IMG/VR virus record: IMGVR_UViG_3300044644_001125 | Span: 62,001 to 126,000 of that record | Length of the DNA: 64,000 bases | Direction: 5' to 3' (one strand) | In this document: positions 14,716 through 43,770 of the stretch, piece after piece | How positions within the stretch are numbered: the stretch's first letter is position 1 | Layout: every line of letters begins with the position of its first letter | Notes under the pieces: model-generated | Databases searched by the model: none | What the model saw: the letters and a program-made list of their open reading frames with translations, nothing else | What the model was told of the DNA's origin: nothing | Position numbers and translations under genes: made by a program

Positions 14716-14883
14716 GGTTTGAATCCTGTAGTGCTTTTGTTAAGGTGGGTATAGTTTAACGGTTTGTTGCTACCATGTCAAATTTATTTTTGCATAACGC
14801 ATTATACGCGTATAGGCGTATATCATTACAGCGGGTAACGGGCGTTTTATGCTGATTTAACGCCCGTCACAGCTCGTTCGAGC

Positions 14884-15204
14884 TTAGATACCGTACTCGC
14901 GTATTGTGTACAATTCTGATTTTGTTTCGATTGCCTTGTAATCACCAAACGCAATGCTAGGATTAGCAAAGGATTCGCTGGCATCGTCATAAGCGGCTTT
15001 AGCACGTTCTACATTCGACCAAAATGACGATGATTCGAGTTTGATTGACGCGGTTACGATACCGTCTGTTTCACTGATTGCATCAGCATCATAGAACGAC
15101 CAATCGCCTAGATTAAAAGACAATTCTACATTGTCCCATAAATCAGCAGGTACTTCTACAACAAAGTTTACAACGTAGGTTAAGTTTTGATTATTCGCGT
15201 TCAT
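14884..15204 (-). CDS. Early hypothetical protein
   Basis: Start moved to MNANNQ after AGGA SD. Confidence 0.7.
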   Translation of the reverse strand: MNANNQNLTYVVNFVVEVPADLWDNVELSFNLGDWSFYDADAISETDGIVTASIKLESSSFWSNVERAKAAYDDASESFANPSIAFGDYKAIETKSELYTIREYGI

Positions 15205-15292
15205 GGTATGAATCCTATAAAGTGTAGTGAAAAGAGCAAGCCGTTTGACTTGGTGCATATTCTACACGAATTACACACCAAGTCAAATCTTT

Positions 15293-15586
15293 TTACGCTG
15301 GTAGGCGATAACGTGGAACGTCCGTGTATTCGCTTAGGACAGACCACCCATATTGCAGGACAGGCTCTTCACGTTCTGATACTTCGCCACTGTAGGCATT
15401 GGTAACGGTGGTAGACCAAACAGGCTCGAAAGCCTGCCATTTTGTCCATGCTTTTGCATAACCATTGTAGGCATAGGCACGTTGAAACCATGCGCCTGTA
15501 GCAGATAGCGCGACTTCTACGTTTACGCCAAAAGTGTTTGAGCCACCAAATGCGCGTACTGCTTTCACTGTTTTTGATGTTGCCAT
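15293..15586 (-). CDS. Early hypothetical protein
   Basis: Cassette promoter and GGAG SD. Confidence 0.75.
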   Translation of the reverse strand: MATSKTVKAVRAFGGSNTFGVNVEVALSATGAWFQRAYAYNGYAKAWTKWQAFEPVWSTTVTNAYSGEVSEREEPVLQYGWSVLSEYTDVPRYRLPA

Positions 15587-16020
15587 GATGTTTACTCCGT
15601 AGTGCTTTGTTAAGGTGGGTATATTCTAAAAGATAATTAAACTATTGTCAACCTCTAAATTCATATACGCGTATACACGTATAGGCGTGTATACTCACAG
15701 CGGGTACTGGTAGACTTCACGCCTACCAGCTCCCTCGGATTGGTTAACTATCGCTGTTGATGTATACCCATTCAGCGTATAACTCTTCTATTGTTGTGCC
15801 GTACTTCAATTCTAGTTTTTCTTCTTTGTTTAGTTTTTTCGCATACTCTTCGATTGTTTTGATTTCAGTTGGCACTGCGTATATTTTACCTTGGAATTCA
15901 ACAGATGTAGGTTTATTAGAATTGTCGTAGTGTAGGATTGGTTTCATTGTCTTGTTTCCTGTAGTGCTGTTTAGTGAGGTTATAGTCTAATGGATTATAA
16001 CCTCACTGTCAAATTTATTT

Positions 16021-16368
16021 TTAATCTAGTCTACTGCAAGCATAAGCGTCGATACCGTTATCGCGTAAGACTTTGGCGTATGCTTGTGCGCCTGCTTCGA
16101 GTGTATCCACGTTTTGAACGTGAAGTCTGCTAGGATTCCATAACTCAAAGCATTTTGAGGTATAACCTTTATCGAATCCTAGACTTTCCAATTGTTTACC
16201 TAGTTTGCTATTGGCACGAATGCGTTGTTCAATGCGAACCCAAGCGAAACCGCAGGCGAATCTATCAACACCACCTAGTTTGTTGATAAAGTATTCGCGT
16301 GCCGCAGTTTCAGCGGCTAATGATGCTTGTGTGTGGATTGCTGTTAAGTCTAAAGTTGTAGTAGTCAT
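16021..16368 (-). CDS. Early hypothetical protein
   Basis: CGFAWV...SRLD phage-type small protein; cassette promoter. Confidence 0.75.
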   Translation of the reverse strand: MTTTTLDLTAIHTQASLAAETAAREYFINKLGGVDRFACGFAWVRIEQRIRANSKLGKQLESLGFDKGYTSKCFELWNPSRLHVQNVDTLEAGAQAYAKVLRDNGIDAYACSRLD

Positions 16369-17024
16369 TTTAAATGTCCTGTAGTGCTGTTGTTTAGTGA
16401 GGTTATAGTCTAATGGATTATAACCTCGATGTCAAATTATTTTTATTCGAAAGATAAAGCAATCGTAATACCGTTTTTGGTAGCTTTGCCAGCAGTGCGT
16501 ACTTTGCTTTGTAATTGCATTGCTTGTGCTGTTTGGCTTGCTGTATAGCCACCACCGCAGACTTGTAGGCAGACTGCCGCGAGTGCATCGATTGGGTGTT
16601 GTGTTTTGAAGTTAGGTTTTTTAGTAACTGTGATGTAGGTTGTCATTGCTTTGTTTCCTGTAGTGCTTTGTTAAGGTGGTGATAGTTTAGTTGATAACTA
16701 TCACCTTGTCAACCATTATCTTTTAATTAAGTTTATAGTAATGTTCCACGGCTAACCCATTACCAGCACCGCAATCGAATAATTCGGTACGGCATGATAG
16801 TACATTATCTTTGAGTAATTCGTGAAACGCGGCGGTTATTTGCTTATCTAATTGAACCCATTTATTGAAATCAGTTCTGAATGCGTGATGATATTCTGCT
16901 AAAGTCCAGCAGAATTTTGACGCAGATACTTCTGTTTGTTTGGTTAATGCGTCAATGATTAGTGCTTTCATGGTGTTTACTCCGTAGTGCTTGTTAAGTT
17001 GGGTATAGTCTAAAAGATAATCGT

Positions 17025-17291
17025 TTAGCTGTCAACACTTTTATTTTGTCGTTCACGGCTTGCCATAGCCATCAGTGAGAAGTTGCTACATTTATCTTCC
17101 CAGCGTAGTAAATCCGCCACTGCGTAGCGTATGTGTTCTTTTTTGTACACTCTAATTTCTTGGTTTACCGCACCATTAGCAAATACTCTAACGTTCCAAC
17201 CTTTACCGATTCGTCTAACGGTGATTTCATGATGACACCAACCTAGACCTATTCGAGCTGGTGTTATGATTTGTTCTAATTTTATTTTCAT
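17025..17291 (-). CDS. Early hypothetical protein
   Basis: Cassette promoter and SD. Confidence 0.7.
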   Translation of the reverse strand: MKIKLEQIITPARIGLGWCHHEITVRRIGKGWNVRVFANGAVNQEIRVYKKEHIRYAVADLLRWEDKCSNFSLMAMASRERQNKSVDS

Positions 17292-17424
17292 AATGTTTAC
17301 TCCGTAGTGATGTTAAGTTGGGTACATTATAAAGGCGAATGTACCTAATGTCAACTCTATTTTTGCCTATACGTGCGTATATGGGTATAATGCGCGTATA
17401 GGCTTGCGTACTCACAGCGGGTAC

Positions 17425-17637
17425 TCAGTATCTGTGACGTCTTGCGTATCGTCTTTTATCGTAGTAGCCTCTGCGATAGTCGCCATATCGATAATGCGGG
17501 ACATAGTTATACTCTTTGAGGTATACTGGATGGCCCGGAATGTAGGTGGTGTCTGTTTCATAGATTGGATAGGTTGCCTCATAGACAGGGCCAGCAGTAC
17601 AACCAGTGAGCAATAAGATTAAGATATATTTTAGCAT
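17425..17637 (-). CDS. Small putative lipoprotein
   Basis: MLKYILILLLTGC lipobox. Confidence 0.55.
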   Translation of the reverse strand: MLKYILILLLTGCTAGPVYEATYPIYETDTTYIPGHPVYLKEYNYVPHYRYGDYRRGYYDKRRYARRHRY

Positions 17638-17904
17638 GATAGTCTGATGTGGTCGATGGTTTCGTGGACTGTTAAGGTTTCAGTAATTAAGTTAATCACG
17701 GTGCCGTTTTCCAGTGGTTTAAGTGATACGATGTATTTTGTGTTAATATAGATCGTTTCGTGTTGTTCGTTGGTAACTGGTAGTAGCATAAGGATCCTTT
17801 TGATTATGGCTCGTCACTAACGTGACTCGCTAGGTTATATGTGTATGTATATGTGTATAATTACCCGCGTGAATGGCGTACACTCACAGCGGGTAATGTG
17901 GATT

Positions 17905-18327
17905 CTAAAGTAAATCGTGGATATGGTAGCAATTTTGGTAGAAGTAAGGTAGTTTAGTTTTACCTACTGATTCGTTTTCTACACGAAACTCGTAGAAGTA
18001 ATCGTCATAATCGTCTGTGTTAGATTCTTTAGTTGGTTCGTACTCCCAGAATGTCACGATGCCGCTACCAGATACGGTTAGGTAGTTTGCCCATGATGGT
18101 GCTGGTGAGTCGGTTATATCGGCTAGTGCTAGTGGCAATTCGATGACTGTTGGTTTGGTCACAGGTGTGAATGATTCGCCTAGATACGTTGAACTTGACA
18201 TACTGAACACGTCATCACTGATAATCCATGTTTCACCGTAGTGTGCATTGACTTGATTGTCTTTGATGCTAATGAATAACGCGCCAGTTGGGATTGTGCT
18301 TGTGTCGATTACTTCGTATGCTTTCAT
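17905..18327 (-). CDS. Early hypothetical protein
   Basis: Cassette promoter and SD. Confidence 0.7.
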   Translation of the reverse strand: MKAYEVIDTSTIPTGALFISIKDNQVNAHYGETWIISDDVFSMSSSTYLGESFTPVTKPTVIELPLALADITDSPAPSWANYLTVSGSGIVTFWEYEPTKESNTDDYDDYFYEFRVENESVGKTKLPYFYQNCYHIHDLL

Positions 18328-18408
18328 GGTCTTTGCTCCGGTAGTGCTTGTTAAGTTGGGTATAGTTTAATCGTAAATTGACGAACTGTCAAGCATTATC
18401 TTTTAGAA

Positions 18409-18540
18409 AAAGAAAAACCTAACAGAGCACTACTTCTGTTAGGTTGTTTCAGTGGTGGTATACTAGGGTCACTACTCCCACATTGACCACCTTGTTACTG
18501 GGCGTTGGTTAGGTTTCCATGCCCAGTGGATTTGCACTAC
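18409..18540 (-). ncRNA. Candidate sRNA/3'-UTR RNA with AGUAGUG loops ending in a terminator
   Basis: Hairpin 18416-18445 (loop AGTAGTGC, U-tail); hairpin 18454-18491 (loop AGTAGTGA); further GTAGTGC at 18534-18540. Confidence 0.55.
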
Positions 18541-18987
18541 ACTTTGAATTTTGGGTTTGTTTTGCCAATGGTTGCCGCGCTTAGTAGCTGGATTGTTTTG
18601 TTGTCGAATCCGAGCTGTTTGGCTAGGTCTTTGACTGTTTCTTTTGGTTTAGTGGGTTTGTTCATTTGGCAGTGCCTATTTGTGTTTTAAGGGGTGTACA
18701 AGGCTCGCGCGTTGCGCTCGCGAGCCTAATGTTTATAAACCTTTTAATAACTGGTTTACTACTGGTTTTAAATCGTCTTGTAGGTTATCTAGTTCTAATT
18801 GGTATTCTAAACTTTCGCTGTATTGTTCTAAATCTCTTACTACATAGTCAAGTAATCTCATTCTACCTTCTAGGGTTAGGACTTCGTACATATCAATGGT
18901 AATTGGACTGTAGTTACTCATGGGTAGTGCCTCTTTGTTTTGTTAAGGTGGTGCTATTCTAAAAGATAATTAACGCACTGTCAAGTA

Positions 18988-19599
18988 TTATCTTTTAGTT
19001 AGAATCAATCTAATGTCTTTCTTTTCTGGGGTATAAGCCCAAACTCGTTGGTCGAAGTCGTAGTCTTCTTCACCGTGGTGTAGTTTAACATTGGTTTCTA
19101 GTATGGTGTTAGTTGCAATGTCTACGATGTCTACTTGGTATTCTTCTAGGTTGCTAAACATTTTCCAAAGTTTTCTCGCGCCATAGTATTGTTCTTCGCC
19201 ACCCATTAGCGTATAACCTGCGTCAATTAGGCTCATATAGCTACCTGATGCAATGCCACGTCCATATTGGTTATCGACAACCTTGACTGCTTTAACGCTT
19301 AGTATGTTACTATAGTGTTCAAAGTTTGGCATTTTTTCAAGGCTAATTTCACCAGATACTTTAAACTTATCCTTTATAGTTTTGTAGTTCTTATCGATGT
19401 CTTCAGCAAAGAACCCGACAACAAACTCATAAGAGTTGTTTAGTTGATAGCGTTCCATTACGCTATCAGTCGTGTTTACAGTTCCAACAAAGGTATATTT
19501 GCTTTTCATTACACCCATTGTTATATCTGAATAGGCTAGTTGGGTATTCCATTCACCGTATCGTGCGATTGACATTTCTGTTAAGTCTTTTATTCTCAT
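18988..19599 (-). CDS. GNAT-like acetyltransferase
   Basis: VKVVDNQYGRGIA acetyl-CoA motif, ARKLW; N-terminus MRIKDLTE. Confidence 0.6.
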   Translation of the reverse strand: MRIKDLTEMSIARYGEWNTQLAYSDITMGVMKSKYTFVGTVNTTDSVMERYQLNNSYEFVVGFFAEDIDKNYKTIKDKFKVSGEISLEKMPNFEHYSNILSVKAVKVVDNQYGRGIASGSYMSLIDAGYTLMGGEEQYYGARKLWKMFSNLEEYQVDIVDIATNTILETNVKLHHGEEDYDFDQRVWAYTPEKKDIRLILTKR

Positions 19600-20924
19600 G
19601 GTCGTTCTCTTGGTTACAAGGCTCGCCTACGGCTCGCAAGCCTTGTATTGAGTTATCTTTTAGTTATCTATCGCCAACTGCTTCGTTATGTAGTTGTTTA
19701 ATGCGTTCGTCTGTTTCGATGGCAAAGTAACTTTGTAAAATGCTTTTTAAGTATCCAACGTCTTCTAAACAGGTATCTAGTGCATCATCGACTAATTCGT
19801 CTATTAGTTGTTCAATATTCATGGGTAGTGCCTCTTTGTTTTGTTAAGGTGCGAGTAGTATATAACTACTCGCTGGGTTTGTCAATTGTTTTTTATTGGT
19901 CTTCTAGCATTAAGTCTTCAAGGTTTGTAACTAAGCCGTCAAAGTCTTCATCTGGGCCGAGTGTACTTGCGTAGAAGAAGACTGTTTCGCGGTCGATGCC
20001 GAAGTCATCTGCTAGGTTGTTCAAGTAGTCTTTGCGGTTTTTGTAACCTTCTTCAGTGTAAATGCTCATAGGTAGTGCCTCTTTGGTTATCTTGTAGCGG
20101 TATTGCTACAAGGTGGTTATATTCTAAAAGATAATTGATTTACTGTCAACTGTTTTATTGTACTGGTTTGCCATTTTCGTCATAGATACCAGTACGGTTG
20201 TGCATTTCGTCATAGTTGTCTAGGCATTCATTGATTTTGTCGTTGTTGCCTTTGTAGAGTGTTTTACAGAAACCCACTTGATAGCCTACTGTTGGTTCTA
20301 CTGCTCTATAGATAAAGTAAGCACTTGTTAAGGTGATTACTGATAATATGATTGATGTTATGATTTCTTTCATTGTTTTTCTCTGTTCGGTTAAGGTGGT
20401 GATAGTTTAATCGTTTATCACCACCGTGTCAAATCTTTTTTATGCGAAGTCTTTAACTAATTCTACTTCGGTTGCGTATGGGAAGAACTGCTCGAATAAC
20501 TCGTTTGCTTTGGTCGATGACTCTGCGTTGATTACCAAGGTTTCTTCAGTGCCGTACATACCAATGTAGTGGTATTGATATGGGAATAGTTCTTTCATTT
20601 GTAGTGCCTCTTGGTTTTGTTAAGGTGGGTACAGTATAGTTGTTCTGTACCCAGTTGTCAACTATTATTTTGATTGGCAGGTTGCCGCGTATCCGATTAA
20701 ACCTTCTTCTAGTGCGTGGTTTAATGCTGGTGTAATTTGTGCTTTGTAGGTTTCGCATTCAGCAGTGGTTGTGAAGTTACGCGCCACATTAGTTGGTGTG
20801 TCGTTGTTCATGTCAACTGGTGTGAAGTAAAGTGATACGAGTAAGATAATCATTTTGTTTGTCCTGTAGTGCTTTGTTAAGGTGGGTACATTGTATTCTC
20901 AATGTACCCAGTTGTCAACTCTTT

Positions 20925-21119
20925 TTATCCTATTGCTTGCACTAAGTATGCGTAGGTGATTTCTTTCTTCGTGCCTTTTGGTAATCCTAGTAGCTGGCAA
21001 GCTACTGTGTTTGCTGATTTTCCACGACCTTTCAATCCTTTGATTTCTAATCCAAGTGCTGATTTCAAGGTTAATAATTGGAATCTGCTGATTTGTTCTG
21101 GTGTAGTTAATGCGCTCAT
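20925..21119 (-). CDS. Small early protein (copy 1)
   Basis: Near-identical to 38032-38226. Confidence 0.8.
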   Translation of the reverse strand: MSALTTPEQISRFQLLTLKSALGLEIKGLKGRGKSANTVACQLLGLPKGTKKEITYAYLVQAIG

Positions 21120-22088
21120 CTTTGTATCTCCGGTAGTGCTTTGTTAAGGTGGGTATAGTTTAGTCGTTTATGCCTACATTGTCAACAACTTTCGTTAAAC
21201 AATCTACAGGATAATAACAACAGTCGCCAAAAGATACTGAATACGAGTACCACGTAGTCATTACACCGTCTATGAGGTTATTCCATTCGCTTTGCTTGGT
21301 ATTGACTACGTCACCAATGATAGGCTTTGAACCTCCTAAGTCTAGGCTAAGTGTTAAGCCTATCACTGAGTTGATGTCTGTTTTCATGCGATCTAGTACG
21401 TTCATGGTTTGTCCTTTGACAGCTCGCGCTAACGCGCTCGCATAATATAATCTTTAGTCTGCTGGTTTAACATGGATTATGTTTATATCACTACCGTGTT
21501 TATAATGTGCCATCTTTCTTGCGTTTTCTGCATCTGATATAGTAATATAGTCATACTGGGTAATGGTACGTTTAGTGAAGTTGTAATCGTACTTCTCGAA
21601 GTAGACTTCAAACTGGGTTAGTCCATCGGTTCTTCTACACATGGGTTGCCTCTATGTTGGATAGATAGTTGTGCCGTAGACTTCTACGGGTTCGAGTAGA
21701 ATAGTATCATACTCGACTGTCACTGTCAATAAGGCGACCAGTACTATTATTGCGATTGATTGTAGTATAATTATAGTTCGCATTGCTTATCTCTTGAACA
21801 GGTAATAACCGACAGCTAACATGACTAGGTATCCCGCGCCACCACTGCCAATGATTCCAGCAGTGCCAAAGATAAGCAATCCAACCATAACAAACCAGAA
21901 AGCAACCTTAATGAATAAGGTTAGCACTGTTGCGAATATAGATAGCATTATCAATGCAAAAATGATAGTGGCGGCTAGTTCGGGTGCGTTTTCCATTGGT
22001 TGCTCTCGTATGTGCGTATAGGTGTGTTATGTCACAGCGGGTAAAGAGGCTAAAAGATGATTGAGTTATCTTTTAGCCTTGTTGATAT

Positions 22089-22391
22089 TTACCCTTGTAG
22101 TTCTTCTAGGGTAACTCTGGTTACTCGTTCAATGATGAGTTGGTCTGGTGTAACCGCAGTGAGTTCGAGATACCAAGCGTCAAAATCTTCATCCTGTGTA
22201 AACGTTTTAACTGTTACTTCATCGGTATCTGAATCAAACTCGAATTCATCAACTAGGTGTGGGTATCCCTCGTGTTCTACTTTGATTTGAAAACCTGTGT
22301 TAAGGTTATAATACGTTACGGTTTCTTGCCATTCTGCTTGATTGGCTGTTAATACGTTTACTGCTGTTAATGCGTCTAGGTATGCTTTCAT
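22089..22391 (-). CDS. Early acidic hypothetical protein
   Basis: Cassette promoter and SD. Confidence 0.7.
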   Translation of the reverse strand: MKAYLDALTAVNVLTANQAEWQETVTYYNLNTGFQIKVEHEGYPHLVDEFEFDSDTDEVTVKTFTQDEDFDAWYLELTAVTPDQLIIERVTRVTLEELQG

Positions 22392-22461: not shown

Positions 22462-23388
22462 TTAGTGTAATATTTTTGAACCTTTGGTTCTGTTACATCT
22501 CCAACATAATGTTTGTAAGTTACTTTCTACAGTAAAACCGCCTTTCGATAATGGTATAATATGGTCGATTTCTAATAGTAGATTCTTTTCATCATTAGTT
22601 GATAGATTACACATTTGGCAAGTATGGCTATCTCTGTTCTTTATCTTAGTTCTAAGTGCCGATGTCATCAATGCGCGTTGTCCAGCGATACTCTTTTTGA
22701 ATTTGATGTTATCATTCAAGTAAGCAATAAATCTGTTTAAGTTTGATATATCGAATTGAATGTCATTTTTCATAAAACTGTTACCACCAGCCGACACGTA
22801 TTGAAACGAATAAACTGGAAAATACAACTCGCTCAAGTCAACATAATTCAAACCCAACTTCTGTTTCAACAATTCTGAATCAAAACGCATAATCAATGGT
22901 GGTATGCAATTTGATATACTTGCAATAATCTCATCTCTTTCAGTGGTTAGTAATCTTTTACCCTCTTGAACCGACCCGTAATCATTTAACATACTTTCAA
23001 AGTTCGATAATGCGTCTTCATCAATTCCAATATTGAAATACTTACACAGGTACTTGAATGGTTGATTGTTTGAGTTTTTCAGCACAGAAGACGAACAGCG
23101 ATGAACAAATGTATTACTTTTTCTGATATTTGCCCAGTTTGGTCTTTTGAAATTATAATTGCTACTATCACGCAACGTACTTACACCCATATTGTTAGCT
23201 GGTATATGAACGTGAGATTGTTTTAACTTCTCTATGTACTCGTTTAATTCGTTGCAATTGTTAACATGATAATATACGGTATCGCGTATATTCAAGAAAA
23301 TCTGACTTTTAAAATATCTATTTCTATATACTACATATACAATCCACATCACACATAACAATCCAATCACAGCAATTGCCAATTTCAT
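22462..23388 (-). CDS. Membrane-anchored HNH endonuclease
   Basis: N-terminal TM helix; RD..TCQMC, EIDHIIP, NLQTLCWRCN. Confidence 0.85.
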   Translation of the reverse strand: MKLAIAVIGLLCVMWIVYVVYRNRYFKSQIFLNIRDTVYYHVNNCNELNEYIEKLKQSHVHIPANNMGVSTLRDSSNYNFKRPNWANIRKSNTFVHRCSSSVLKNSNNQPFKYLCKYFNIGIDEDALSNFESMLNDYGSVQEGKRLLTTERDEIIASISNCIPPLIMRFDSELLKQKLGLNYVDLSELYFPVYSFQYVSAGGNSFMKNDIQFDISNLNRFIAYLNDNIKFKKSIAGQRALMTSALRTKIKNRDSHTCQMCNLSTNDEKNLLLEIDHIIPLSKGGFTVESNLQTLCWRCNRTKGSKILH

Positions 23389-27855: not shown

Positions 27856-27931
27856 TGGTGCCATTACAGGGATTCGAACCCCGATCTTACGCATTATGAG
27901 TACGCGGCATTAACCGTTATGCTATAATGGC
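27856..27931 (-). tRNA. tRNA with CAU anticodon (elongator Met or Ile2)
   Basis: GCCATTA/TAATGGC acceptor, GCAT/ATGC D stem, CT-CAT-AA loop, GTTCGAATC T loop, encoded CCA; lacks initiator features. Confidence 0.92.
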
Positions 27932-30901: not shown

Positions 30902-31658
30902 CTCTTAGGCTCGTGCCTATCGGCACTCGCTAAGTTGGGTACATTATCTTTTAGAATGTACCCATTGTCAAGTATTATTTTAAACTACCTTACCTACGAA
31001 AACGTAATTATGTCTACTCATATCAGCTAGATTACCAATCGAGTTAATCCAAAAAGGATCTGTATTTTGTGAATCAAGTATAACCTTATTGGCAACTTCT
31101 TCTAGGTGGTGTACCTTGTTTACTTGAGTTTTACCTAGTAAGATACTATTGTCTAAATTATCTTTTAGTGCTTTAGCCACTTGCGCTAAGTCACTTTCGT
31201 GTCTGGTAAAACTACCAGCAATGGATATTGGGTTTATGTTCATATTAGCACCTATCACTTTGATGTGGCAAACAATGCCGTAAATGCCCACAGCATACTC
31301 TTAATGCCGCGCCATTGAGCGGCGCGTATTGCTGTAATAGATACTGTGGTGACCTGTGTTCTTCGTATGGTGGTGGCATCATTACTGTTGGTGACATTTG
31401 GCAACCATACAAAGAAACTAAAAGTATATAGGCTATTTTACGCATGACTGAGTACCTAACAAAACAAAACCGAAACAGATTAACCCAAAGCCAACTGCTA
31501 TTGCAATAATTGCCGTTAACCACTGGCTAGTCATTAAACCTAAGTCACCAATCGAACCTAGTGCCATACCTGTTGCGATTGAAGTCATCGCTTTACTTAA
31601 ATTTGTCATAGAGTGCCTCGTGTGCGTAGGTGTACCCGCCTTCACAGCGGGTAATCTG

Positions 31659-36915: not shown

Positions 36916-37179
36916 TTAGATTAGTCTGTTTTGTTTCATTACAGCGCATTCAATACTATTGACTTTGGCAGTACCGCATTTACCACCACCAATGTTTCTG
37001 AATGTCACGCTATCACCTAAGACTTCTACTGTTCCTACTTCTACCACATCACCAAACTCTTTTACATAGAGTTGAATATGACGTGCTGGTTCGTATTGGA
37101 AGAATCCATTGTCCTCCTCGTCAAACAATTCCAAGTAAGGTAATAAATCAGCAAAGGTGGTTTCTGTCATTGTGTACAT
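36916..37179 (-). CDS. Early protein (paralog B)
   Basis: Paralog of 35942-36202. Confidence 0.75.
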   Translation of the reverse strand: MYTMTETTFADLLPYLELFDEEDNGFFQYEPARHIQLYVKEFGDVVEVGTVEVLGDSVTFRNIGGGKCGTAKVNSIECAVMKQNRLI

Positions 37180-37246
37180 GGATATTCTCCGTAGTGCTTT
37201 GTTAAGGTGGGTACATTCTAAAAGAAAATACCCACCATGTCAATCT

Positions 37247-37960
37247 TTATTTTGTGCGAATAACGAATCCGCTAGTATCTTTTTTCGCGCGTCCTTTGGC
37301 TTTCAATCCAATAACCAAGTCTAGGTTAGTATTATTGAATCTTAAGTCATCCAAGTCACCATCAACTACAGGAACACCATTCCAAGTGGCGGGTACTTCA
37401 TCGAATACCACTGCAATAGAGTAACCTTGTTCCAATGCTTTCATTACGTCTGCATCGTTTGATTCTGCTCTACTGAATGTTAAATGGTAGTTACCTAGGT
37501 GCTTAACCTTACGATTAAGAATCTTACTGTAGTCGTAGAATTGTACTGTAGGGAAGTGTTCAAACACGTTCTTACCACCAACGTAAATGTTTTCCCATAG
37601 AATGTCACTTGTACCATTTAAACGGAATACAGGTGTCATACCTTTACGCTCTGCTTGTTTAATGGCTTTTGTTATATCAGTGATTAAGGTTTCCATGAAA
37701 ACCTCTCTGTTTGTTTTAAAGAACACGGTTCTACGTTTACGAGCCTCTTGTACCGCGTTAGTGGTTTCACCTGCTTTAAACATACCACCATGTCCAGCAG
37801 TATTCAAACAAGCCGCTCTGCATCCAGCAGTAGCCTTTGGGCAAGTGTTCATTACACCAGATAAGTCACTTGGTGCTAGGTGAAGAATGTAGGATTTATA
37901 ACCTTGTGATTCACCTTTAATGATTTTAAGGTTTGAAGTAGTGAGAAGTGAAAATGCCAT
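37247..37960 (-). CDS. Gp88-like Fe-S protein
   Basis: CPKATAGCRAACL, RLNGTSD, QFYDYSK, YHLTFS, GDLDDLRF, GLKAKG. Confidence 0.75.
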   Translation of the reverse strand: MAFSLLTTSNLKIIKGESQGYKSYILHLAPSDLSGVMNTCPKATAGCRAACLNTAGHGGMFKAGETTNAVQEARKRRTVFFKTNREVFMETLITDITKAIKQAERKGMTPVFRLNGTSDILWENIYVGGKNVFEHFPTVQFYDYSKILNRKVKHLGNYHLTFSRAESNDADVMKALEQGYSIAVVFDEVPATWNGVPVVDGDLDDLRFNNTNLDLVIGLKAKGRAKKDTSGFVIRTK

Positions 37961-38031
37961 TGTAGTAACTCCGTAGTGCTTTGTTAAGGTGGGTACATTG
38001 TATTCTCAATGTACCCATTTGTCAAATCTTT

Positions 38032-38226
38032 TTATCCGATTGCTTGTAACAAGTACGCGTATGTGATTTCTTTCTTCGTTCCTTTTGGTAAACCTAGCAA
38101 CTGGCAAGCCATTGTATTAGCCGATTTTCCACGACCTTTCAATCCTTTGATTTCTAATCCAAGTGCTGATTTCAAGGTTAATAACTGGAATCTGTTGATT
38201 TGTTCTGGTGTAGTTAATACGCTCAT
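38032..38226 (-). CDS. Small early protein (copy 2)
   Basis: Near-identical to 20925-21119. Confidence 0.8.
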   Translation of the reverse strand: MSVLTTPEQINRFQLLTLKSALGLEIKGLKGRGKSANTMACQLLGLPKGTKKEITYAYLLQAIG

Positions 38227-39149
38227 CTTTGTAACTCCGTAGTGCTTTGTTAAGGTGGGTATAGTTTAGTGGATCTTTACCCTGTTGTCAACTCTTTTTT
38301 TTCTTCTTATTGGCTCGTGCCTATCGGCACTCGCAAACAAGTGGGTACATCCTACTCGAAAATACCCACCTTGTCAAATCTTCTTTTAGTGTGATGCAAT
38401 TATCGAATCATTGGACAATGAAAACCAATAACCACGTCGCTTATAGTCTGCAATGATTGCAAAGGCCTCCTCCTCTGGCATAGCTTGCAGCTCGTCCAAG
38501 TCTAGTTTAATCGAATCATTACGTGGTTTTGTGCCTAGTATAAATGTCGGTTCGTTCATTTTGTTTGCTCCTGTATGTTTATGTTTCGGCGTATAGCCTA
38601 CCAGTAGTTAGCCGAGTTGTCAACAACCCACTAACTCATCATACAGTTCTTGGTAAACACTGCCTTGGTATGCACCATCATCAAAGTCCATGACAGCACA
38701 TCTCTCAATAAAATCCAGATTGGATTCACCCTCATATTGCTCGTACAGCACAGAATACTTCTCATAAGCCTCTGGGATTTGTTTAACTTTCTCAATATAT
38801 GAATCTATCATCGTAGTATCCTCTTGGGTTTAAGTTGGCATTAGTCTACCAAGTTACTGGTTACTTGTCAACTCTGTATACCAAACTCCCTATCAATCCA
38901 CTCCTGCTCATCTGGATACACATAAGTGAAGATGACTTCCCCATCTTTTAGGGATCTCAAATCCTCCATGAAGTCATGGGGATACAGGATGTCTGCGCCT
39001 TCAGGCAGAACTGATGAGTCGATGATGGTTACGCCAGTTGCTGTTGTTGCTTGTAAGTAGTTTGCCATGCGGTTTCTCTGGGTTGTGGTTATTTGTGGGT
39101 ACAGTCTAAAAGATAATTAACCCAATGTCAAGCATTATCTTTTAGGCAT

Positions 39150-39180
39150 AAAAAAGCCATCGTTTTTCGATGGCGTTTTT
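39150..39180. terminator. Bidirectional intrinsic terminator
   Basis: A-run, GCCATCG/CGATGGC stem, T-run. Confidence 0.7.
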
Positions 39181-39820
39181 GATTTTATTTAGCACCAGCC
39201 CTTACTAAAAGATCATTGACTATCTCTTCACAGCGTGGTGAATGGCATTCAACCCTTTTGATCCGCTCTACCATCGCAGGATCTGGTATGTATGCAGCGG
39301 GTACGAAGTACCATACCTGCATTAATATAACCCCTACCTGCATTCCAAGGATCGCACATATCCCAAGTGTATTCCACGGACTTTCCCTCCATAGCTCAAT
39401 GAACTTAAGTTTACCTACATGGATTAACGTAACAATCCATACAAACCCACCTATCCATAGTGCGGTTATTACGAATGACTCTAATGACATTTTCTTCTCC
39501 TATACGTGTATATGCATGATGCTCACAGCGGGTAACCTGACTCTACCATACGTGCACACTCAATAGCTTCCAGTGCACTAGCACGGATAGTCTTGAAATC
39601 TATCTGATCAGCATCCCAAGTGGCCTGCCAAACAAACTGCCACCAGAACTTCCAATGCTTCCGGTATACATGAATCTCTACTGCATTCTTACCTGCATAG
39701 AAAATCCGGGCCTGGTAGATACCATCATCAACTTTTAACATGTGTGCTCTCCTATATGTGTGAATGCAGGTATATTATCATATATCCTTCAGCGGGTAAA
39801 GTAGAATTTAAAGGTAAGTG

Positions 39821-39989
39821 AATCAATAACTTACAAGCGTTCGTTTCATTTTTTGTGTATTGTAGATTATTGACCCTGTAGGGTAACCAGGGTAAGATAC
39901 TGTTTAAAGGTACTGTTTGTAAGTCATTGATTTATATCATTATTATTTTAAGGGTCTAAAAGATAATAGCTTTATAATTCAATGACTTA
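39821..39989. promoter_or_regulatory. Cluster of IHF-consensus sites
   Basis: WATCAANNNNTTR at 39821-39833 (+) and 39920-39932 (-), near-match at 39977-39989; another at 46662-46674 (-). Confidence 0.55.
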
Positions 39990-40061
39990 CAAGAAAGTAG
40001 TTGAAAATTGAATGAAAACACGTGTATATTAGCACGAGCTACTAACACGCACAGCGGGTAA

Positions 40062-40394
40062 CTAGGATTTGATCAACCATACAAACGATTGATTGGCAGC
40101 ACAACCAAGCACGAGTCCAGGGTTATTCACTATCATTTCGATTCTACCATCAGCGGTATTCTCCTGAGTTACATGTGGATAGTTCATCTCTTTAATCATA
40201 GAGTTGGTATAGAGATCACATTGATAACGACTCATCCCACGCTTCCAAGCTACTATGATATGTGAATTCTGTTTCATTGCATCATAGTCAACTAAGAACC
40301 CGGCGTTCAACATGTTCTGTTTGATATCATCCAAGGTATATGCATTGGCGTTTAACGATGCTAGTAATGCGATTACTGCTAATAACTTTTTCAT
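40062..40394 (-). CDS. Secreted hypothetical protein
   Basis: Signal peptide MKKLLAVIALLASLNANA. Confidence 0.65.
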   Translation of the reverse strand: MKKLLAVIALLASLNANAYTLDDIKQNMLNAGFLVDYDAMKQNSHIIVAWKRGMSRYQCDLYTNSMIKEMNYPHVTQENTADGRIEMIVNNPGLVLGCAANQSFVWLIKS

Positions 40395-40503
40395 TTTGAT
40401 TTACTCGGTTAGTTAGAAAGTTACTATTATACATGTATATGTACAGATGTCAAGTACCTGCACAGCGGGTAGATAGGTATAGCGAGGCACGCTAGTGCCG
40501 AGC

Positions 40504-42285
40504 CTAGTCTTCGTCATCCTCGTCGTCATATTCATACAAGTACTCTTCATCCCCATACTGAACACTATCGTATCTATGATCAGAACCATCGAAGTAATCT
40601 GTACCCCAAGAGTCACGATGGCGTTTAGCATAACGTTCGCGTTCCTCCTTAATGGCTCGCATCTCTGGTTCAATTAATGAATCATCAATATCCGATTCAA
40701 TGATCCGAGTAGTATTACCACGTGACAATTCATATTCCTGTTCACGTATGACTAATCTATGAATGGCAACCTTACGGTCATTATCCTCAACTCTAGGACC
40801 AACCATCGCAGTATACCCAGTAAGTTTCTCACCCACTAACTTCCAATATGGCATACCAAACGCTGTTTTGATACGCAACTCGATCTCCTGCAGATCATCA
40901 AATGCAATCTTATTTCGCACAATGAACGCGTCATGCACACCGATTAGTATCTCATGTCCCATAGTTTCCGCAATCGATGTAGCACTAGTCATGATCGCAG
41001 TCTCAGCATGCTGGTACAAGTAAGCCATCTCTTTGGCCTTATTACGACACCCTTTGTCTGTTTTAGTACAGGTTAACGGAGCCAATATACTTTTATTCTT
41101 CTCTAGGATAAACTCAGCTAACTCCATATGCTCATGGATAAATCCACTAATCAAATCATGATTCAAAAATGCATCACGAATTTCATTATCTTTTAGGATA
41201 ACACCTAACGAATTAACCAATGGATTGTCTGGATCTTTTGGGTTGGGTATGACAATCCCGAATACCTTCGCACCAAAAGATATGGCATTCATCATAGCCT
41301 TGATCTTTTTACGACACCACTCAGGATCATACCGGTGAACATTACCCGCTTTGTCTTTGTAAGTACGGCATAAGAACACGTGCTTCAAACAGTCCTGTAT
41401 AAAGTCTTCCTTATCTGTCAGGTAATGATTAGTATACTGGAACCTTTCTGGTTTTACTTCTCGGTTATACGCAGCTGCATAACTATACTTCCAGGCAATG
41501 GATGAAGAACTGATATCATACTGCCATGAATCACCCAATACATTCTTACGCATTTCCCTTGGGATGTTATGCATCGATAACCCAACATAATACAATCGGC
41601 CAAATACACTCTGCTTCTTCCGCTGGAACCAATACCCATCACCTTTATGTGCTAGGGCCAAGATCATCTTAGCCTTACGTATATAACTCTTGCGTTGGTC
41701 CTCATCCAACTTAGTACTGTCATAGATAAGCCAATTCAAGTAATTAGTTAACGTTGTAGTATTAACTTCAATTGGGTGAAACATCGCTAAACAATCATCA
41801 GCTGACATTAATCCCTGACTTGCATATAAAACCTCTGGATATTCCCTGTAGAATAAATCATCATACATTTCATTATCAAGGAAATCATCAGTCTGGATGT
41901 TAAGTTGTTTTTCTTCGTATTCTTCTAGGCTCATGTCAAATAGATCTGTGTAAGTACAACGGTTGTCAATTAGGGAGATAGTAGATTTTACCTTCTGTAA
42001 ACTATTACCCATGTTTAGAACTTTTATGATTGGCTTATTATCTTTTAGCCAGGAATGAACTCGTACCTTCTTACCTTTCGAATCGGTAATTCTCCCACCG
42101 GTATCATGTAATACCTTCATTGGGATCTGATACTGACTATACGCAGTACATGCGTAATCGTTTGTAATTGATATATGTATCAAGTTAGACAAGACCTTAG
42201 AATACTTCTCAAGTGCTTTATCTACTGATTTTTTAGAAAACTCCGCATACATTGCTTCGTACACAGACTCGTGGATTTCGATCAT
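40504..42285 (-). CDS. Family-A (right-hand) polymerase-fold protein
   Basis: GRLY, motif A YDISSS, motif B KIKAMMNAISFG, YQHAE, motif C VHDAF. Confidence 0.65.
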   Translation of the reverse strand: MIEIHESVYEAMYAEFSKKSVDKALEKYSKVLSNLIHISITNDYACTAYSQYQIPMKVLHDTGGRITDSKGKKVRVHSWLKDNKPIIKVLNMGNSLQKVKSTISLIDNRCTYTDLFDMSLEEYEEKQLNIQTDDFLDNEMYDDLFYREYPEVLYASQGLMSADDCLAMFHPIEVNTTTLTNYLNWLIYDSTKLDEDQRKSYIRKAKMILALAHKGDGYWFQRKKQSVFGRLYYVGLSMHNIPREMRKNVLGDSWQYDISSSSIAWKYSYAAAYNREVKPERFQYTNHYLTDKEDFIQDCLKHVFLCRTYKDKAGNVHRYDPEWCRKKIKAMMNAISFGAKVFGIVIPNPKDPDNPLVNSLGVILKDNEIRDAFLNHDLISGFIHEHMELAEFILEKNKSILAPLTCTKTDKGCRNKAKEMAYLYQHAETAIMTSATSIAETMGHEILIGVHDAFIVRNKIAFDDLQEIELRIKTAFGMPYWKLVGEKLTGYTAMVGPRVEDNDRKVAIHRLVIREQEYELSRGNTTRIIESDIDDSLIEPEMRAIKEERERYAKRHRDSWGTDYFDGSDHRYDSVQYGDEEYLYEYDDEDDED

Positions 42286-42500
42286 CTTATTCTTCCTATG
42301 GTTTGTGTTACCAGTTCTCTGATCAAACCACCCCTAATTCGGTTGGCCAACCTAGCTAGGGGTTTAAGAAAAATGATTATGATCAATCGAACTTTTAACT
42401 CATGTATTTAGTACAGGACCTCCATTATCTTTTAGTCGAATTAATACTATCACAGCCATAACCAATCAGTCAACTAATATATCTAAAAGATAACTTCATT

Positions 42501-42562
42501 AATAGTTCAATTATCTTTTAGTGATATAGACCATCAATAGTTCAATTATCTTTTAGTGATAT
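42501..42562. repeat. 27-bp direct repeat x2
   Basis: AATAGTTCAATTATCTTTTAGTGATAT at 42501 and 42536. Confidence 0.85.
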
Positions 42563-42875
42563 CTCCAATTGCTCGATGGATTTCTTGTGCAATTACTAGA
42601 GGGATTCTGAGGAGAATCCAGGAGAAGAAGCAAAGACCAAGGAAGCCACCAAAGGCATAAGGAGAAGATCAACAAATCTCTTCTCCCTTAGGGAGACACT
42701 TTTTCGGTCTGCAGGCCGCATTCTATATATACCTGATTATGACAGTTATGTTACAAGCTCGTGCCTACCGGCACTCGCAATCGAAAAAATTCACACACTA
42801 GTCAACCCAGGGAACTTTTCAGGCAATAAAAAGGCAGAACTAAGTCTGCCTGTGTATGAGTCAAATACATCATTG

Positions 42876-43367
42876 TTATAGGTATGAATCCACCTTAACT
42901 ACTTTAATACAATTACCTTCATCTTCGGTAACGGTAAAATCAGAAACAAATGCATCTGGTCTTAGCAAATACGCTTCGGAGATTGGTTCTTTGTACCAAA
43001 CAGCCAACCCATTAAATATAGAATACGATCTATGAATTGCTTTACATGACCAGCATCTATTACCATACTTATTTTCCCATCCATGATCTTCCGTACCTTT
43101 TAAAACTTCACCATACAATTCTATCTCATAGGTTGGAATAACTCGTTTAATAAGATTAACATTGTTTATGGCAGTCCAACGATTAAACAACTGTGGATTA
43201 GTATGAAACTTTGGTATATACCACGATTTCTGCTCGGGTGACCAACAGGCACCAAGTTTCTTCGCTATGGGTTTATGTGTAAATGGTACATCAATTATTA
43301 TACCACCCGAAAAATGTAACGATTGCTTTTTCCTTTTTTCCTCACGGAATTTTTCAAGAATATTCAT
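42876..43367 (-). CDS. DUF5710-like domain protein
   Basis: IDVPFTHKPIAKKLGACW....KSWYIP. Confidence 0.7.
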   Translation of the reverse strand: MNILEKFREEKRKKQSLHFSGGIIIDVPFTHKPIAKKLGACWSPEQKSWYIPKFHTNPQLFNRWTAINNVNLIKRVIPTYEIELYGEVLKGTEDHGWENKYGNRCWSCKAIHRSYSIFNGLAVWYKEPISEAYLLRPDAFVSDFTVTEDEGNCIKVVKVDSYL

Positions 43368-43770
43368 AATTCACACCTAAAAGATAATTGCCAACTATTA
43401 ACTCTATACACACATATACACACGTATATACACCAACATGCACAGCGGGTATACTACAAGCTATTACCAAACTTATCCACTGGCTTACCTATTCGATCAC
43501 ACTCAACCAGAGGTACCGTCACTGTTATACGGATTGACAACACCATTACTATCAACAAAAACACTATACACAAAATTACATTATCTCTACTCATAAAACT
43601 CTCCTATACGTATGGGTACATAACGCTACAGCGGGTATATTACCCTAAAAGATAATGGGCATACAGCATCTCCCAATACTGTACACCCAACTGTTGTAAA
43701 ACTATTCTTTATTATATCCAACTATATACCTATAGTCAAGATATATTGCGAGCACCGCTAGGTGCGAGCC

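What the first reader, a model, noticed from the sequence alone, without database searches (positions are those of the whole stretch)
14800..43640. Polar CAGCGGGTA motif preceded by alternating purine-pyrimidine tracts
Seen: (CA)CAGCGGGTA occurs about 12 times (near 14829, 15698, 17415, 17887, 22035, 31645, 39526, 39790, 40052, 40463, 43443, 43629), always on the + strand and mostly intergenic. It usually follows TATACGCGTATA/GTGTAT-type RY tracts. Inference: an orientation-dependent protein site (Chi/KOPS/Ter-like, or a signal for DNA entry or packaging), with RY tracts possibly Z-DNA-prone behind strong promoters.
Basis: partly seen in the sequence, partly recalled or inferred. Interest (0 to 1): 0.6.

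Follow-up and report, generated by a model that had tools for sequence, protein, structure and literature searches.

The report
Strand-locked intergenic control motif, jumbo phage
An invariant word (TACCCGCTGTR on the gene strand), followed by alternating purine-pyrimidine tracts, sits at the head of a dozen small gene units in the early-gene block of an uncultured 327-kb freshwater phage and its relatives; it behaves like a phage-specific gene-expression signal, most likely a promoter, and not like a Chi, KOPS, Ter or packaging site.

Summary
CAGCGGGTA occurs 13 times in the window, all on the + strand (0.18 expected). These are the only copies in the 327,256-bp phage genome. One-mismatch variants sit at background level on both strands.

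The local genes run on the minus strand, so the word reads TACCCGCTG(T,R) on the coding strand. Twelve copies are intergenic, lying at the 5' edge of the spacer just after the upstream stop codon or hairpin. Each is followed within 60 nt by an alternating R/Y run of at least 10 nt (background 3-7%).

In relatives down to about 70% nucleotide identity, including one contig with unrelated head genes, every intergenic copy is exact and co-oriented (55 forward, 0 reverse in 194 kb). The flanks, upstream genes and hairpins differ. The 13th copy, inside a gene, is lost in the distant relative.

Restriction to 29 kb, intergenic placement and the lack of any polarity switch argue against Chi, KOPS, Ter or packaging roles. 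My best reading (about 0.4) is a phage-specific promoter that needs nothing upstream and heads delayed-early units. Rivals are an RNA processing or nut-like signal, and an operator for two adjacent AraC-type regulators. Transcript 5'-end mapping is needed to decide.

The parts
14803..14837 (-). Motif copy (14829-14837) with its R/Y tract (14803-14814, TATACGCGTATA). It directly follows a 12-bp-stem hairpin and lies 47 nt upstream of a sigma70-type cassette.
   Evidence: identical in G001 and G002
15662..15706 (-). Motif copy (15698-15706) with a 22-nt R/Y tract. It directly follows a hairpin. In G001 the upstream gene, the hairpin (with a compensatory change) and the R/Y tract all differ, yet the 9-mer is exact.
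   Evidence: DNA-run joint at 15706
17368..17423 (-). Motif copy (17415-17423), 1 nt after the upstream stop codon, with a 16-nt R/Y tract. A sigma70-type cassette lies 60 nt downstream.
17836..17895 (-). Motif copy (17887-17895), 9 nt after a stop codon. TACCCGC pairs with GCGGGTA 20 nt on; a 24-nt R/Y tract follows. Two metatranscriptome contigs end at 17882 and 17883.
22007..22043 (-). Motif copy (22035-22043) after a 12-bp hairpin. The ATG of a four-gene unit with no sigma70-type promoter lies 38 nt on.
31619..31653 (-). Motif copy (31645-31653), 5 nt after a stop codon. It forms a hairpin with GCGGGTA. The next ATG is 35 nt on.
39295..39303 (-). Intragenic copy, coding V-P-A-A in the 101-aa ORF 39185-39490. 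It has no T-R extension and the weakest R/Y run. It is probably not under the same selection as the others.
   Evidence: kept in close variants but reads TACCGGAAG in L131, where all intergenic orthologues are exact
39501..39534 (-). Motif copy (39526-39534) over the last codons of the 72-aa ORF. An 18-nt R/Y tract follows, then GGAG and an ATG 35 nt on.
39738..39798 (-). Motif copy (39790-39798) at the 3' end of a conserved ORF-free stretch, heading the 72-aa gene.
40018..40060 (-). Motif copy (40052-40060), 1 nt after the stop of the 110-aa gene, heading a conserved 260-nt ORF-free stretch.
   Evidence: exact in L113, L114, L115 and L131, where the protein is 46-66% identical
40428..40471 (-). 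Motif copy (40463-40471), 9 nt upstream of a consensus TTGACA-N16-TATAAT promoter whose spacer is the R/Y tract.
   Evidence: spacing of 9-10 nt kept in L113-L115 and L131; homology to L110 and L112 starts at the motif
43405..43451 (-). Motif copy (43443-43451), 2 nt after the stop of a 46-aa ORF, with a 29-nt R/Y tract, the longest in the genome. It heads the DUF5710 gene. In L110, L130 and L131 the same unit runs straight into an intrinsic terminator.
43605..43637 (-). Motif copy (43629-43637), the first in transcription order. It lies downstream of a sigma70-type promoter and a terminator-like hairpin. GGAG and an ATG follow 33 nt on.
43771..45605 (-). Candidate trans-acting factors (inferred only). 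Two AraC-type HTH_18 proteins (43771-44364, 197 aa; 44901-45605, 234 aa) flank a MazG-like gene. They lie immediately upstream, in transcription order, of the first motif copy.
   Evidence: (E 1.8e-11 and 5.8e-7); the same gene-motif neighbourhood in L130 and L131

Best explanation
General claim. TACCCGCTGTR is a cis-acting gene-expression signal. It is read on the sense strand and marks the start of transcription or regulatory units in the delayed-early part of the phage's small-gene block. I put confidence in this general statement at about 0.85. The confidence field of 0.4 refers to the specific mechanism below.

Specific mechanism I favour. It is the core of a phage-specific promoter class that needs nothing conserved upstream, comparable in logic to the -10-only late promoters of T4. 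TACCCG would occupy -12 to -7. CTGTRR would occupy the discriminator. Transcription would start at the next base or so. The R/Y tract would then be the initially transcribed leader: unstructured or forming a 5' hairpin, and variable in length.

An unidentified phage factor would redirect the host RNA polymerase to these sites. Candidates are the adjacent AraC-type proteins or an undetected sigma-like protein. This would give a second wave of expression beside the sigma70-type early cassettes and before the TAAATAC late class.

Shown: the anatomy, invariance, polarity, placement and conservation. Inferred: the start site and the factor.
For: 1. Sharpness. There are 13 exact copies and no excess of near-copies. 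Across the window and its relatives there are 55 forward and 0 reverse copies in 194 kb, in 29 flank-distinct contexts. Conservation covers only the 9-mer plus T at +10 (26/29) and R at +11 (29/29).

2. Placement. The motif is co-oriented with genes, intergenic, and is the first element after the upstream stop codon or terminator-like hairpin. This is the stem-loop-then-promoter layout.

3. Independence from upstream DNA. Homology between genomes starts at the motif's 5' edge while upstream genes and hairpins differ. This is seen for G001 vs 15706, and for L110 and L112 vs 40471 and 43637. Any function must therefore lie in the motif and what follows it.

4. Units with no other promoter. Five units (22035, 31645, 39526, 39790, 43629) have no sigma70-type promoter between motif and gene. 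Their layout is constant: motif, then 33-48 nt including GGAG, then ATG. No copy lies closer than 33 nt to a start codon, which leaves room for a leader.

5. Geometry and RNA. With TACCCG as a -10 hexamer, the predicted +1 at site 17887 is base 17883. Two metatranscriptome contigs end at 17882 and 17883, while the upstream gene has no RNA contig.

6. Phage context. The phage has sigma70-type early promoters and a T4-like late system: a TAAATAC word and one gp55-like sigma. PA5oct, the closest cultured relative found (by helicase), depends on host RNA polymerase. The jumbo phage CBB, which the authors liken to GAP32, is reported with a distinct second promoter class (PMC5259590).

7. Selection. 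All 5 intergenic orthologues are exact at about 70% nucleotide identity, whereas the intragenic copy is lost.
Against: - No dedicated recognition factor was found. There is no T7-type RNA polymerase and no Sigma70_r2 domain. There is only one gp55-like sigma, presumably used for TAAATAC. None of the thirteen large ORFs scanned (600 aa or more) is an RNA polymerase; six others of that size were not scanned.
- The RNA evidence rests on assembled contigs at depth 2-4. These cannot prove a 5' end. DNA contigs also break near 17878-17907.
- One RNA contig reads through site 15698, and no RNA was seen downstream of 14829.
- In L110, L130 and L131 one motif + R/Y unit is followed after about 27 nt by an intrinsic terminator. 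A promoter there would make only a transcript of about 45 nt.
- Four copies sit upstream of good sigma70-type promoters at unrelated distances of 9, 46, 47 and 60 nt.
- TACCCG lacks the T at -7 that sigma70-family -10 elements have.
Confidence: 0.4

Rival explanations
1. RNA-level signal. The word acts in the transcript, either as an endonucleolytic processing site that separates cistrons or as a boxA/nut-like site for an antitermination or RNA-binding factor. In the processing version, the upstream hairpin protects the new 3' end and the R/Y hairpin protects the new 5' end.
For: - The motif is strictly sense-strand and tolerant of position. It occurs in 3' UTRs, in 5' UTRs (43629 lies 65 nt downstream of a sigma70-type promoter) and between cistrons.
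- Hairpins abut it upstream in about 10 contexts and often follow it.
- Hairpins without T-runs are common in this genome.
- The RNA contig ends at 17882/3 fit a processed 5' end equally well.
- From memory, CGCTGTGA resembles lambda boxA CGCTCTTA.
- The motif + R/Y unit precedes an intrinsic terminator in L110, L130 and L131.
Against: - There is no common secondary structure. Folding z-scores of motif + 60 nt range from -4.0 to +1.9, and the minimal cassettes are unstructured. There is no Rfam hit.
- Several copies lie downstream of, not before, the nearest terminator-like hairpin (43629, 14829, 15698, 22035). That is the wrong order for antitermination.
- Four copies lie upstream of the local sigma70-type start, so they are absent from those transcripts.
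- A 9-11-nt invariant word is far more specific than known phage RNase sites such as RegB's GGAG (from memory).
- No NusG-like protein was found.
- One RNA contig crosses site 15698 uncut.
Confidence: 0.25
2. Double-stranded DNA operator. The asymmetric word is bound by one or both of the AraC-type HTH_18 proteins encoded just upstream. The protein would act as an activator or as a polar roadblock insulating neighbouring units. The TATAC-NN-GTATA palindromes would be secondary sites.
For: - Two AraC-type genes lie immediately before the first motif copy in transcription order.
- The same gene-motif neighbourhood is kept in L130 and L131, a phage with unrelated head genes.
- From memory, AraC/XylS monomers bind asymmetric sites in an orientation-dependent way.
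- TATACNNGTATA occurs 6 times in the genome, 5 of them beside motif copies.
Against: - Operators normally show degeneracy between sites. Here there is none among the 12 intergenic copies or their orthologues.
- Only about 11 bp are conserved, short for a two-HTH AraC domain.
- Distances to sigma70-type promoters (9, 46, 47, 60 nt) have no common helical phase, and some sites have no such promoter.
- TACCCG-N17-TATAC is present at only 7 of 13 copies, which are probably paralogues. It is absent from the orthologue sets conserved in distant relatives.
- In the minimal cassettes, a start about 35 nt after the motif would fall on or past the GGAG.
- The spacing between motif and palindrome varies from 7 to 31 nt.
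Confidence: 0.17
3. DNA-transaction site at cassette borders. The word would be a recombination or insertion junction for exchanging gene cassettes between phages, or a strand-specific nick site of the kind known (from memory) in T5- and phiKMV-type phages.
For: - Mosaic breakpoints coincide with the motif's 5' edge in several independent comparisons.
- A DNA-run joint lies exactly at 15706, and DNA contigs break at 17878-17907.
- The module is shared with a phage with unrelated head genes.
- All copies are on one strand with exact sequence, as for known nick consensus words.
- R/Y tracts vary in length between strains: 4- and 8-nt indels.
Against: - No tyrosine recombinase was found.
- Breakpoints are equally common at the sigma70-type cassettes, as expected for any conserved regulatory sequence.
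- Nine bases are too few for homologous exchange.
- The fixed relation to gene direction and to stop/start codons points to expression.
- Nothing testable here bears on nicks.
Confidence: 0.1
4. One reading: a Chi, KOPS or Ter-like polar site, or a DNA entry or packaging signal, with Z-DNA-prone tracts.
For: Strong strand bias and over-representation. From memory, AGCGG within the + strand word is the Bacillus Chi core.
Against: - All copies lie in 9% of the genome, 12 of 13 are intergenic, and there is no polarity switch.
- Orientation follows genes.
- Copies are kept at orthologous gene borders in relatives, including one with different packaging genes.
- The single coding-region copy is the one that is not conserved.
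Confidence: 0.03

Closest known systems
T4 late promoters (TATAAATA, read by gp55)
   Same: A short, nearly invariant word with no conserved upstream element. It is co-oriented with genes, and the start lies a few bases downstream. This phage has that system too: TAAATAC plus a gp55-like sigma.
   Different: The word is G+C-rich and lacks the -7 T. It is confined to 12-13 sites in the early block. No second gp55-like factor was found. The start site is not mapped.
PeSL cassettes (promoter-early stem-loops) of T4-type phages RB49 and phi1 (recalled from memory, Arbiol et al. 2010; not read here)
   Same: Small regulatory cassettes of stem-loop plus promoter flank tiny genes in a plastic region and coincide with mosaic junctions. 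The window's sigma70-type cassettes fit this directly. The hairpin + TACCCGCTG units have the same layout.
   Different: PeSL promoters are sigma70-type. The motif is not.
Second, divergent promoter class reported for jumbo phage CBB and also found in GAP32 (-35 TGAAACG with a TATA -10), PMC5259590
   Same: A jumbo phage of the size class of CBB and GAP32, carrying a lineage-specific promoter word besides sigma70-type early and ATAAATA late promoters.
   Different: TGAAACG is not used here. A -35 role for TACCCG fits only 7 of 13 copies and clashes with the ribosome-site distance in the minimal cassettes. CBB encodes its own sigma70-family factor; none was found here.
T4 middle promoters (MotA box plus sigma70 -10)
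   Same: An activator box replaces the -35, and such promoters often sit in tandem with early promoters. The box-to-TATAC spacing of 12-14 nt in some copies recalls MotA geometry.
   Different: There is no consistent TAnnnT at any fixed offset. MotA and AsiA homologues were not looked for. The nearby regulators are AraC-type.
Lambda nut sites (boxA + boxB) and RfaH ops elements
   Same: Polar, sense-strand, short conserved words in leaders or just after a stop codon, sometimes followed by a hairpin.
   Different: There are a dozen copies rather than one or two. There is no fixed hairpin. Several copies lie after the hairpin they would have to override. No NusG paralogue was found.
Chi, KOPS and Ter polar DNA words
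   Same: Strand-biased, over-represented oligomers.
   Different: Those are genome-wide, occur in coding DNA, and are oriented by replication. This motif is regional, intergenic and oriented by transcription.

Membership tests
Chi-like recombination hotspot | Copies spread along the genome, including coding DNA, oriented relative to the DNA ends or replication | tested here: not met
   All 13 copies lie in genome 76.8-105.6 kb of 327 kb; 12 of 13 are intergenic
KOPS/FtsK-orienting or Ter/Tus-type polar sites | Polarity switch or two opposed groups around a terminus or dif site | tested here: not met
   13 forward and 0 reverse in the genome; 55 and 0 including relatives
pac/cos packaging or DNA-entry signal | One locus tied to the terminase or the genome ends | tested here: not met
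   A dozen dispersed copies at gene borders, kept in a contig with unrelated TerL, portal and capsid genes
sigma70-type promoter | TTGACA-like and TATAAT-like hexamers 16-18 nt apart | tested here: not met
   The motif is neither hexamer. Separate sigma70-type promoters lie 9-60 nt downstream of four copies and upstream of one.
Bipartite promoter with an altered -35 (CBB/GAP32 class; MotA-type) | A -10 element at a fixed distance from the box at all sites | tested here: not met
   TATAC at +14 in 7 of 23 contexts only. There is no TAnnnT peak. In the minimal cassettes the implied start would fall on the GGAG.
-10-only promoter (T4 late type) | Invariant short word, no conserved upstream element, co-oriented with and upstream of genes | tested here: met
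-10-only promoter (T4 late type) | Primary transcript 5' ends a few bases downstream of the word | tested here: inconclusive
   Two low-depth metatranscriptome contigs end at 17882 and 17883, the predicted +1. One contig reads through another site. Contigs cannot prove RNA ends.
-10-only promoter (T4 late type) | A dedicated sigma-like specificity factor | tested here: inconclusive
   Only one gp55-like gene and no Sigma70_r2. Divergent factors could escape these searches.
T7-type single-subunit RNA polymerase promoter | The phage encodes such a polymerase | tested here: not met
   No PF00940 match, although the control genomes were also silent. None of the thirteen large ORFs scanned (600 aa or more) is a polymerase; six others of that size were not scanned.
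Lambda nut-type antitermination site | Conserved word plus a hairpin at a fixed distance, placed before the terminators it overrides | tested here: not met
   Hairpins are absent from the minimal cassettes and variable elsewhere. Several copies follow the nearest hairpin.
Integron-like attC cassette site | Tyrosine recombinase in the element | tested here: not met
   No PF00589 match, and the control rang in all 14 of 14 genomes
Operator of AraC/XylS-type regulator | Binding by the adjacent HTH_18 proteins | not testable with these tools
   Only the gene neighbourhood and its conservation were shown
Described structured RNA family | Match to an Rfam covariance model | tested here: not met
   Only a tRNA-Met at 27856-27931 reached threshold in the window
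Z-DNA-forming tract | Left-handed transition under supercoiling | not testable with these tools
   Alternating R/Y composition is confirmed. The tracts are rich in TA steps and often palindromic, so cruciforms or hairpins are equally possible.

The most novel reading that the evidence does not exclude
The word is the border signal of a gene-cassette exchange system. Units of the form [TACCCGCTGTR, R/Y tract, small gene, stop or hairpin] would be moved between unrelated phages of the same host by a sequence- and strand-specific DNA transaction at the motif's 5' edge (a nick or a recombination step), carried out without a tyrosine recombinase. This would be integron-like logic in virulent phages.
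Probability: 0.08. Interest if true: 0.85.

Novelty: new variant of a known kind. Interest (0 to 1): 0.5.

Why it matters
How large host-polymerase-dependent jumbo phages time the expression of hundreds of tiny early genes is poorly known. This lineage offers a clean three-class picture. It has sigma70-type stem-loop cassettes, an invariant TACCCGCTGTR class and a T4-like TAAATAC late class.

The middle class has a sharply defined 11-base word that can be tested directly by reporter fusions, 5'-end mapping and pull-downs. If it is an upstream-independent promoter read by a new phage factor, that factor is a new way of retargeting bacterial RNA polymerase, and the motif is a compact orthogonal promoter. 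The motif also marks mosaic junctions, which bears on how phages swap small gene modules.

Tried and rejected
- Coding explanation. TAC-CCG-CTG followed by a stop codon (Y-P-L-stop) fits a real ORF end at only 2 of 13 copies. The frequent TGA/TAA/TAG reflects a T-R-R preference.
- Common RNA fold. None was found.
- Bipartite -35/-10 model and MotA-like geometry. Rejected as the universal function.
- Phage RNA polymerase or extra sigma. PF00940, PF04542, phrog_234 and phrog_12791, plus scans of thirteen large ORFs (600 aa or more), gave only one gp55-like gene.
- NusG paralogue and tyrosine recombinase. Absent.
- Literature search for the word. It returned only unrelated primer hits.
- GenBank phages. 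A nucleotide search gave no match, and protein searches gave no close relative.
- IMG/VR. A 14-mer scan gave mostly chance hits plus two true relatives. The 593-aa protein found nothing there.
- The CBB word TGAAACG. Not used here.
- The 138-aa gene between the AraC genes. It looks MazG-like by source names, not sigma-like.
- The intragenic copy as an internal promoter. Dropped after L131 showed the copy is not conserved.
- Read evidence. Only one read-laying run was allowed (6,000 bases, 14200-20199), so the 39-44 kb sites were not examined at RNA level.

Full report
**What the window is**

The window is bases 62,001-126,000 of a 327,256-bp IMG/VR phage record, about 92% complete and 38% G+C. 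DNA runs holding it come from freshwater lakes.

By its helicase, the nearest cultured relatives are PA5oct-type and Atu_ph07-type jumbo phages, at about 50% amino-acid identity. PA5oct depends on the host RNA polymerase.

No T7-type polymerase, Sigma70_r2 domain or polymerase-like large ORF was found here. One gp55-like late sigma is present at genome 303,191-303,964. A T4-late-like word, (C/A)TAAATAC, precedes many genes.

**The observation**

- CAGCGGGTA occurs 13 times in the window, all on the + strand, against 0.18 expected. These are the only copies in the genome.
- One-mismatch variants are at background, equal on both strands, and lack the R/Y context. The set is therefore sharply bounded.
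- From window 11 kb to beyond its end, genes run on the minus strand. The word is thus TACCCGCTG on the coding strand, and the R/Y tract follows it in the direction of transcription.
- Twelve of 13 copies have an alternating R/Y run of at least 10 nt within 60 nt downstream (median 14). Random windows reach this in 3% of cases and intergenic windows in 7%. The upstream side is at background.
- The seven longest R/Y runs of the genome all adjoin a motif copy.
- The tracts are built from TATAC/GTATA units, often as palindromes or hairpins with variable spacing. They vary in length between strains, with 4- and 8-nt indels.

**Anatomy**

An anchored alignment shows conservation of the 9-mer, T at +10 and a purine at +11, and nothing upstream.

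On an ORF map, 12 copies are intergenic.
- Seven lie 0-9 nt after the upstream stop codon or overlap it.
- Four sit 0-10 nt after a G+C-rich hairpin that lacks a T-run.
- Copy 43629 follows a terminator-like hairpin by about 18 nt. Copy 39790 follows a weak hairpin by 15 nt, at the end of the long ORF-free spacer.

What follows the motif varies.
- At five sites the R/Y tract runs into GGAG and an ATG, 33-48 nt after the motif, with no sigma70-type promoter in between.
- At four sites a good sigma70-type promoter lies 9, 46, 47 or 60 nt downstream.
- One site (43629) lies 65 nt downstream of such a promoter, after a terminator-like hairpin.
- There is no common RNA fold and no Rfam match.

**Surroundings**

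Between 14.7 and 38.3 kb nearly every small gene has its own TTGACA-N17-TAnAnT promoter. Each promoter carries a conserved leader and an inverted repeat that co-varies between cassettes. From memory, this resembles the promoter-early stem-loop cassettes of T4-type phages.

DNA runs from other lakes show many deletions and rearrangements with ends in these cassettes.

From 39 to 44 kb such cassettes are absent, and the TACCCGCTG unit is the usual intergenic element.

Immediately upstream, in transcription order, of the first copy lie two AraC-type HTH_18 genes with a MazG-like gene between them.

**Comparative evidence**

- G001 and G002 (IMG/VR, 89-98% identical) keep all six and two orthologous copies respectively. 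Substitutions fall in flanks and loops, never in the 9-mer. At site 15698, G001 has a different upstream gene, a hairpin with a compensatory change and a different R/Y tract, yet the same 9-mer.
- In JGI contigs L107-L112, homology to the window begins 2-3 nt before the motif while the upstream DNA differs.
- Contigs whose 110-aa protein is only 46-66% identical keep both flanking copies exactly.
- ENA contigs L130 and L131 share the early module at about 70-83% nucleotide identity. L130 carries HK97-type head genes unrelated to this jumbo phage. L131 keeps all five intergenic orthologues exactly (four on the shorter L130), next to the same AraC-type gene.
- In total there are 55 forward and 0 reverse copies in 194 kb, in 29 flank-distinct contexts.
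- The one intragenic copy (39295-39303, coding V-P-A-A) is retained in close variants but reads TACCGGAAG in L131. It is probably not a functional member.

**RNA evidence (weak)**

Two metatranscriptome runs from one sample hold parts of the region as assembled contigs at depth 2-5.
- At site 17887 both runs have a contig ending at 17882 or 17883, which is 4-5 nt past the motif. There is no RNA contig on the upstream gene.
- At site 15698 a contig runs from the upstream gene through the hairpin and motif to 10 nt beyond.
- At 14829 the upstream gene's contig stops at the foot of the hairpin, and nothing lies downstream.
- Contigs cannot establish RNA ends, and DNA contigs also break near 17878-17907. 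I treat this only as a hint.

**Interpretation**

This excludes Chi, KOPS, Ter and packaging or entry signals.

The element is a gene-expression signal read in the sense direction, at about 0.85 confidence.

Among mechanisms, I favour a phage-specific promoter that needs nothing upstream (0.4), for these reasons:
- The motif is the 5' limit of conserved modules.
- It follows terminator-like hairpins.
- It heads units that have no other promoter.
- It never lies closer than 33 nt to a start codon.
- With TACCCG as a -10-like hexamer, the predicted +1 coincides with the RNA contig ends.

A role as a -35 or activator box is not general. No -10 sits at a fixed offset, and in the minimal cassettes the implied start would fall on the ribosome site.

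The main weaknesses are three: no recognition factor was identified, the motif + R/Y + terminator unit recurs in three relatives, and the RNA data are poor.

The rivals are:
- an RNA processing or nut-like signal (0.25);
- an operator for the AraC-type proteins (0.17);
- a DNA-transaction site at cassette borders (0.1).

The R/Y tracts may serve as unstructured or hairpin-forming leaders, or as length-variable spacers. Z-DNA cannot be judged with these tools.

**Comparison and novelty**

The word matches no described promoter or site that I could find. A literature search gave only unrelated primer hits, and the jumbo phage CBB (like GAP32, per the authors) is reported with a different second-class word.

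It works most like a lineage-specific middle or late-type phage promoter embedded in stem-loop cassettes. I file it as a new variant of a known kind, with the mechanism unproven.

Noticed in passing
window 14,700-38,300, minus strand: About 30 near-identical early cassettes. Each has TTGACA-N17-TAnAnT, then a leader (A/G)TACCCACCTTAACAAAGCACTACGGAG and an ATG. An inverted repeat spans the spacer and the start region and co-varies between cassettes (GGGTAC/GTACCC, GGTGATAG/CTATCACC, GCGAGTAGT/ACTACTCGC). The layout is PeSL-like. Lake DNA runs show deletions and rearrangements ending in these cassettes. From memory, the leader's CTTAACAA resembles rrn boxA.
   Followed up: partly
whole genome; e.g. 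window 42,286-42,595 and 39,069-39,184: ATTATCTTTTAG / CTAAAAGATAAT is the most over-represented word of the genome: about 140 copies of the 12-mer and about 170 of the 11-mer core, on both strands. It appears inside promoter spacers, in tandem arrays, as hairpin arms and as T-rich tails of hairpins. Its function is unknown.
   Followed up: partly
many intergenic regions, e.g. window 38,300-38,330, 44,840-44,900, 17,800-17,830: A recurrent hairpin element GCGAG-[4-bp stem, 4-nt loop]-CGAGC occurs in both orientations. The stem co-varies, the flanks could form tandem G.A pairs, and there is no T-run. It is often next to the motif.
   Followed up: no
genome-wide; gp55-like gene at genome 303,191-303,964 (outside the window): A T4-late-like word (C/A)TAAATAC lies upstream of many genes. 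In eight cases it is only about 4 nt from the ATG, which suggests leaderless late mRNAs. A single gp55-like sigma is present (E 5e-81 to phrog_12791).
   Followed up: partly
window 39,799-40,051, minus strand: A 260-nt ORF-free stretch is bracketed by two motif copies. It is highly conserved even where the neighbouring protein is 46% identical. It has a long-range hairpin GTAAGTCATTGA...TCAATGACTTAC around an ATTATCTTTTAG. It is a candidate non-coding RNA with no Rfam match.
   Followed up: partly
window 43,771-45,605, minus strand: Two AraC-type HTH_18 proteins (197 and 234 aa) lie in a virulent-type jumbo phage, with a MazG-like 138-aa gene between them. Their sigma70-type -10 hexamers overlap the called ATGs, so the start codons may be miscalled.
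   Followed up: partly
genome 34.3-35.5 kb (-), 165.1-166.1, 232.4-233.5, 310.7-311.8 kb (outside the window): Four copies of a repeat of about 1.1 kb (about 80% identical). Each carries its own R/Y tracts (CACGCGCACATACAT, ATGCACACATACAT) and a one-mismatch relative of the motif (TACCGGCTG) about 265 nt upstream of them.
   Followed up: no
locus L130 (ENA contig, 19.5 kb), bases 1-7,700 vs 8,800-14,600: The same early module (AraC-type gene, 577-aa gene, motif copies) sits beside HK97-type TerL, portal and protease-capsid genes. Those genes have no counterpart in this jumbo phage. The regulatory module is therefore shared between different phage types.
   Followed up: partly
window 27,856-27,931 (-); 22,462-23,388 (-); 62,137-63,444 (+): A tRNA-Met gene lies inside the early small-gene block. 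Two HNH/homing-endonuclease genes are also present.
   Followed up: no
genome 280,218-293,807 (-), outside the window: A 4,529-aa ORF matches a giant virion structural protein family (phrog_10938).
   Followed up: no
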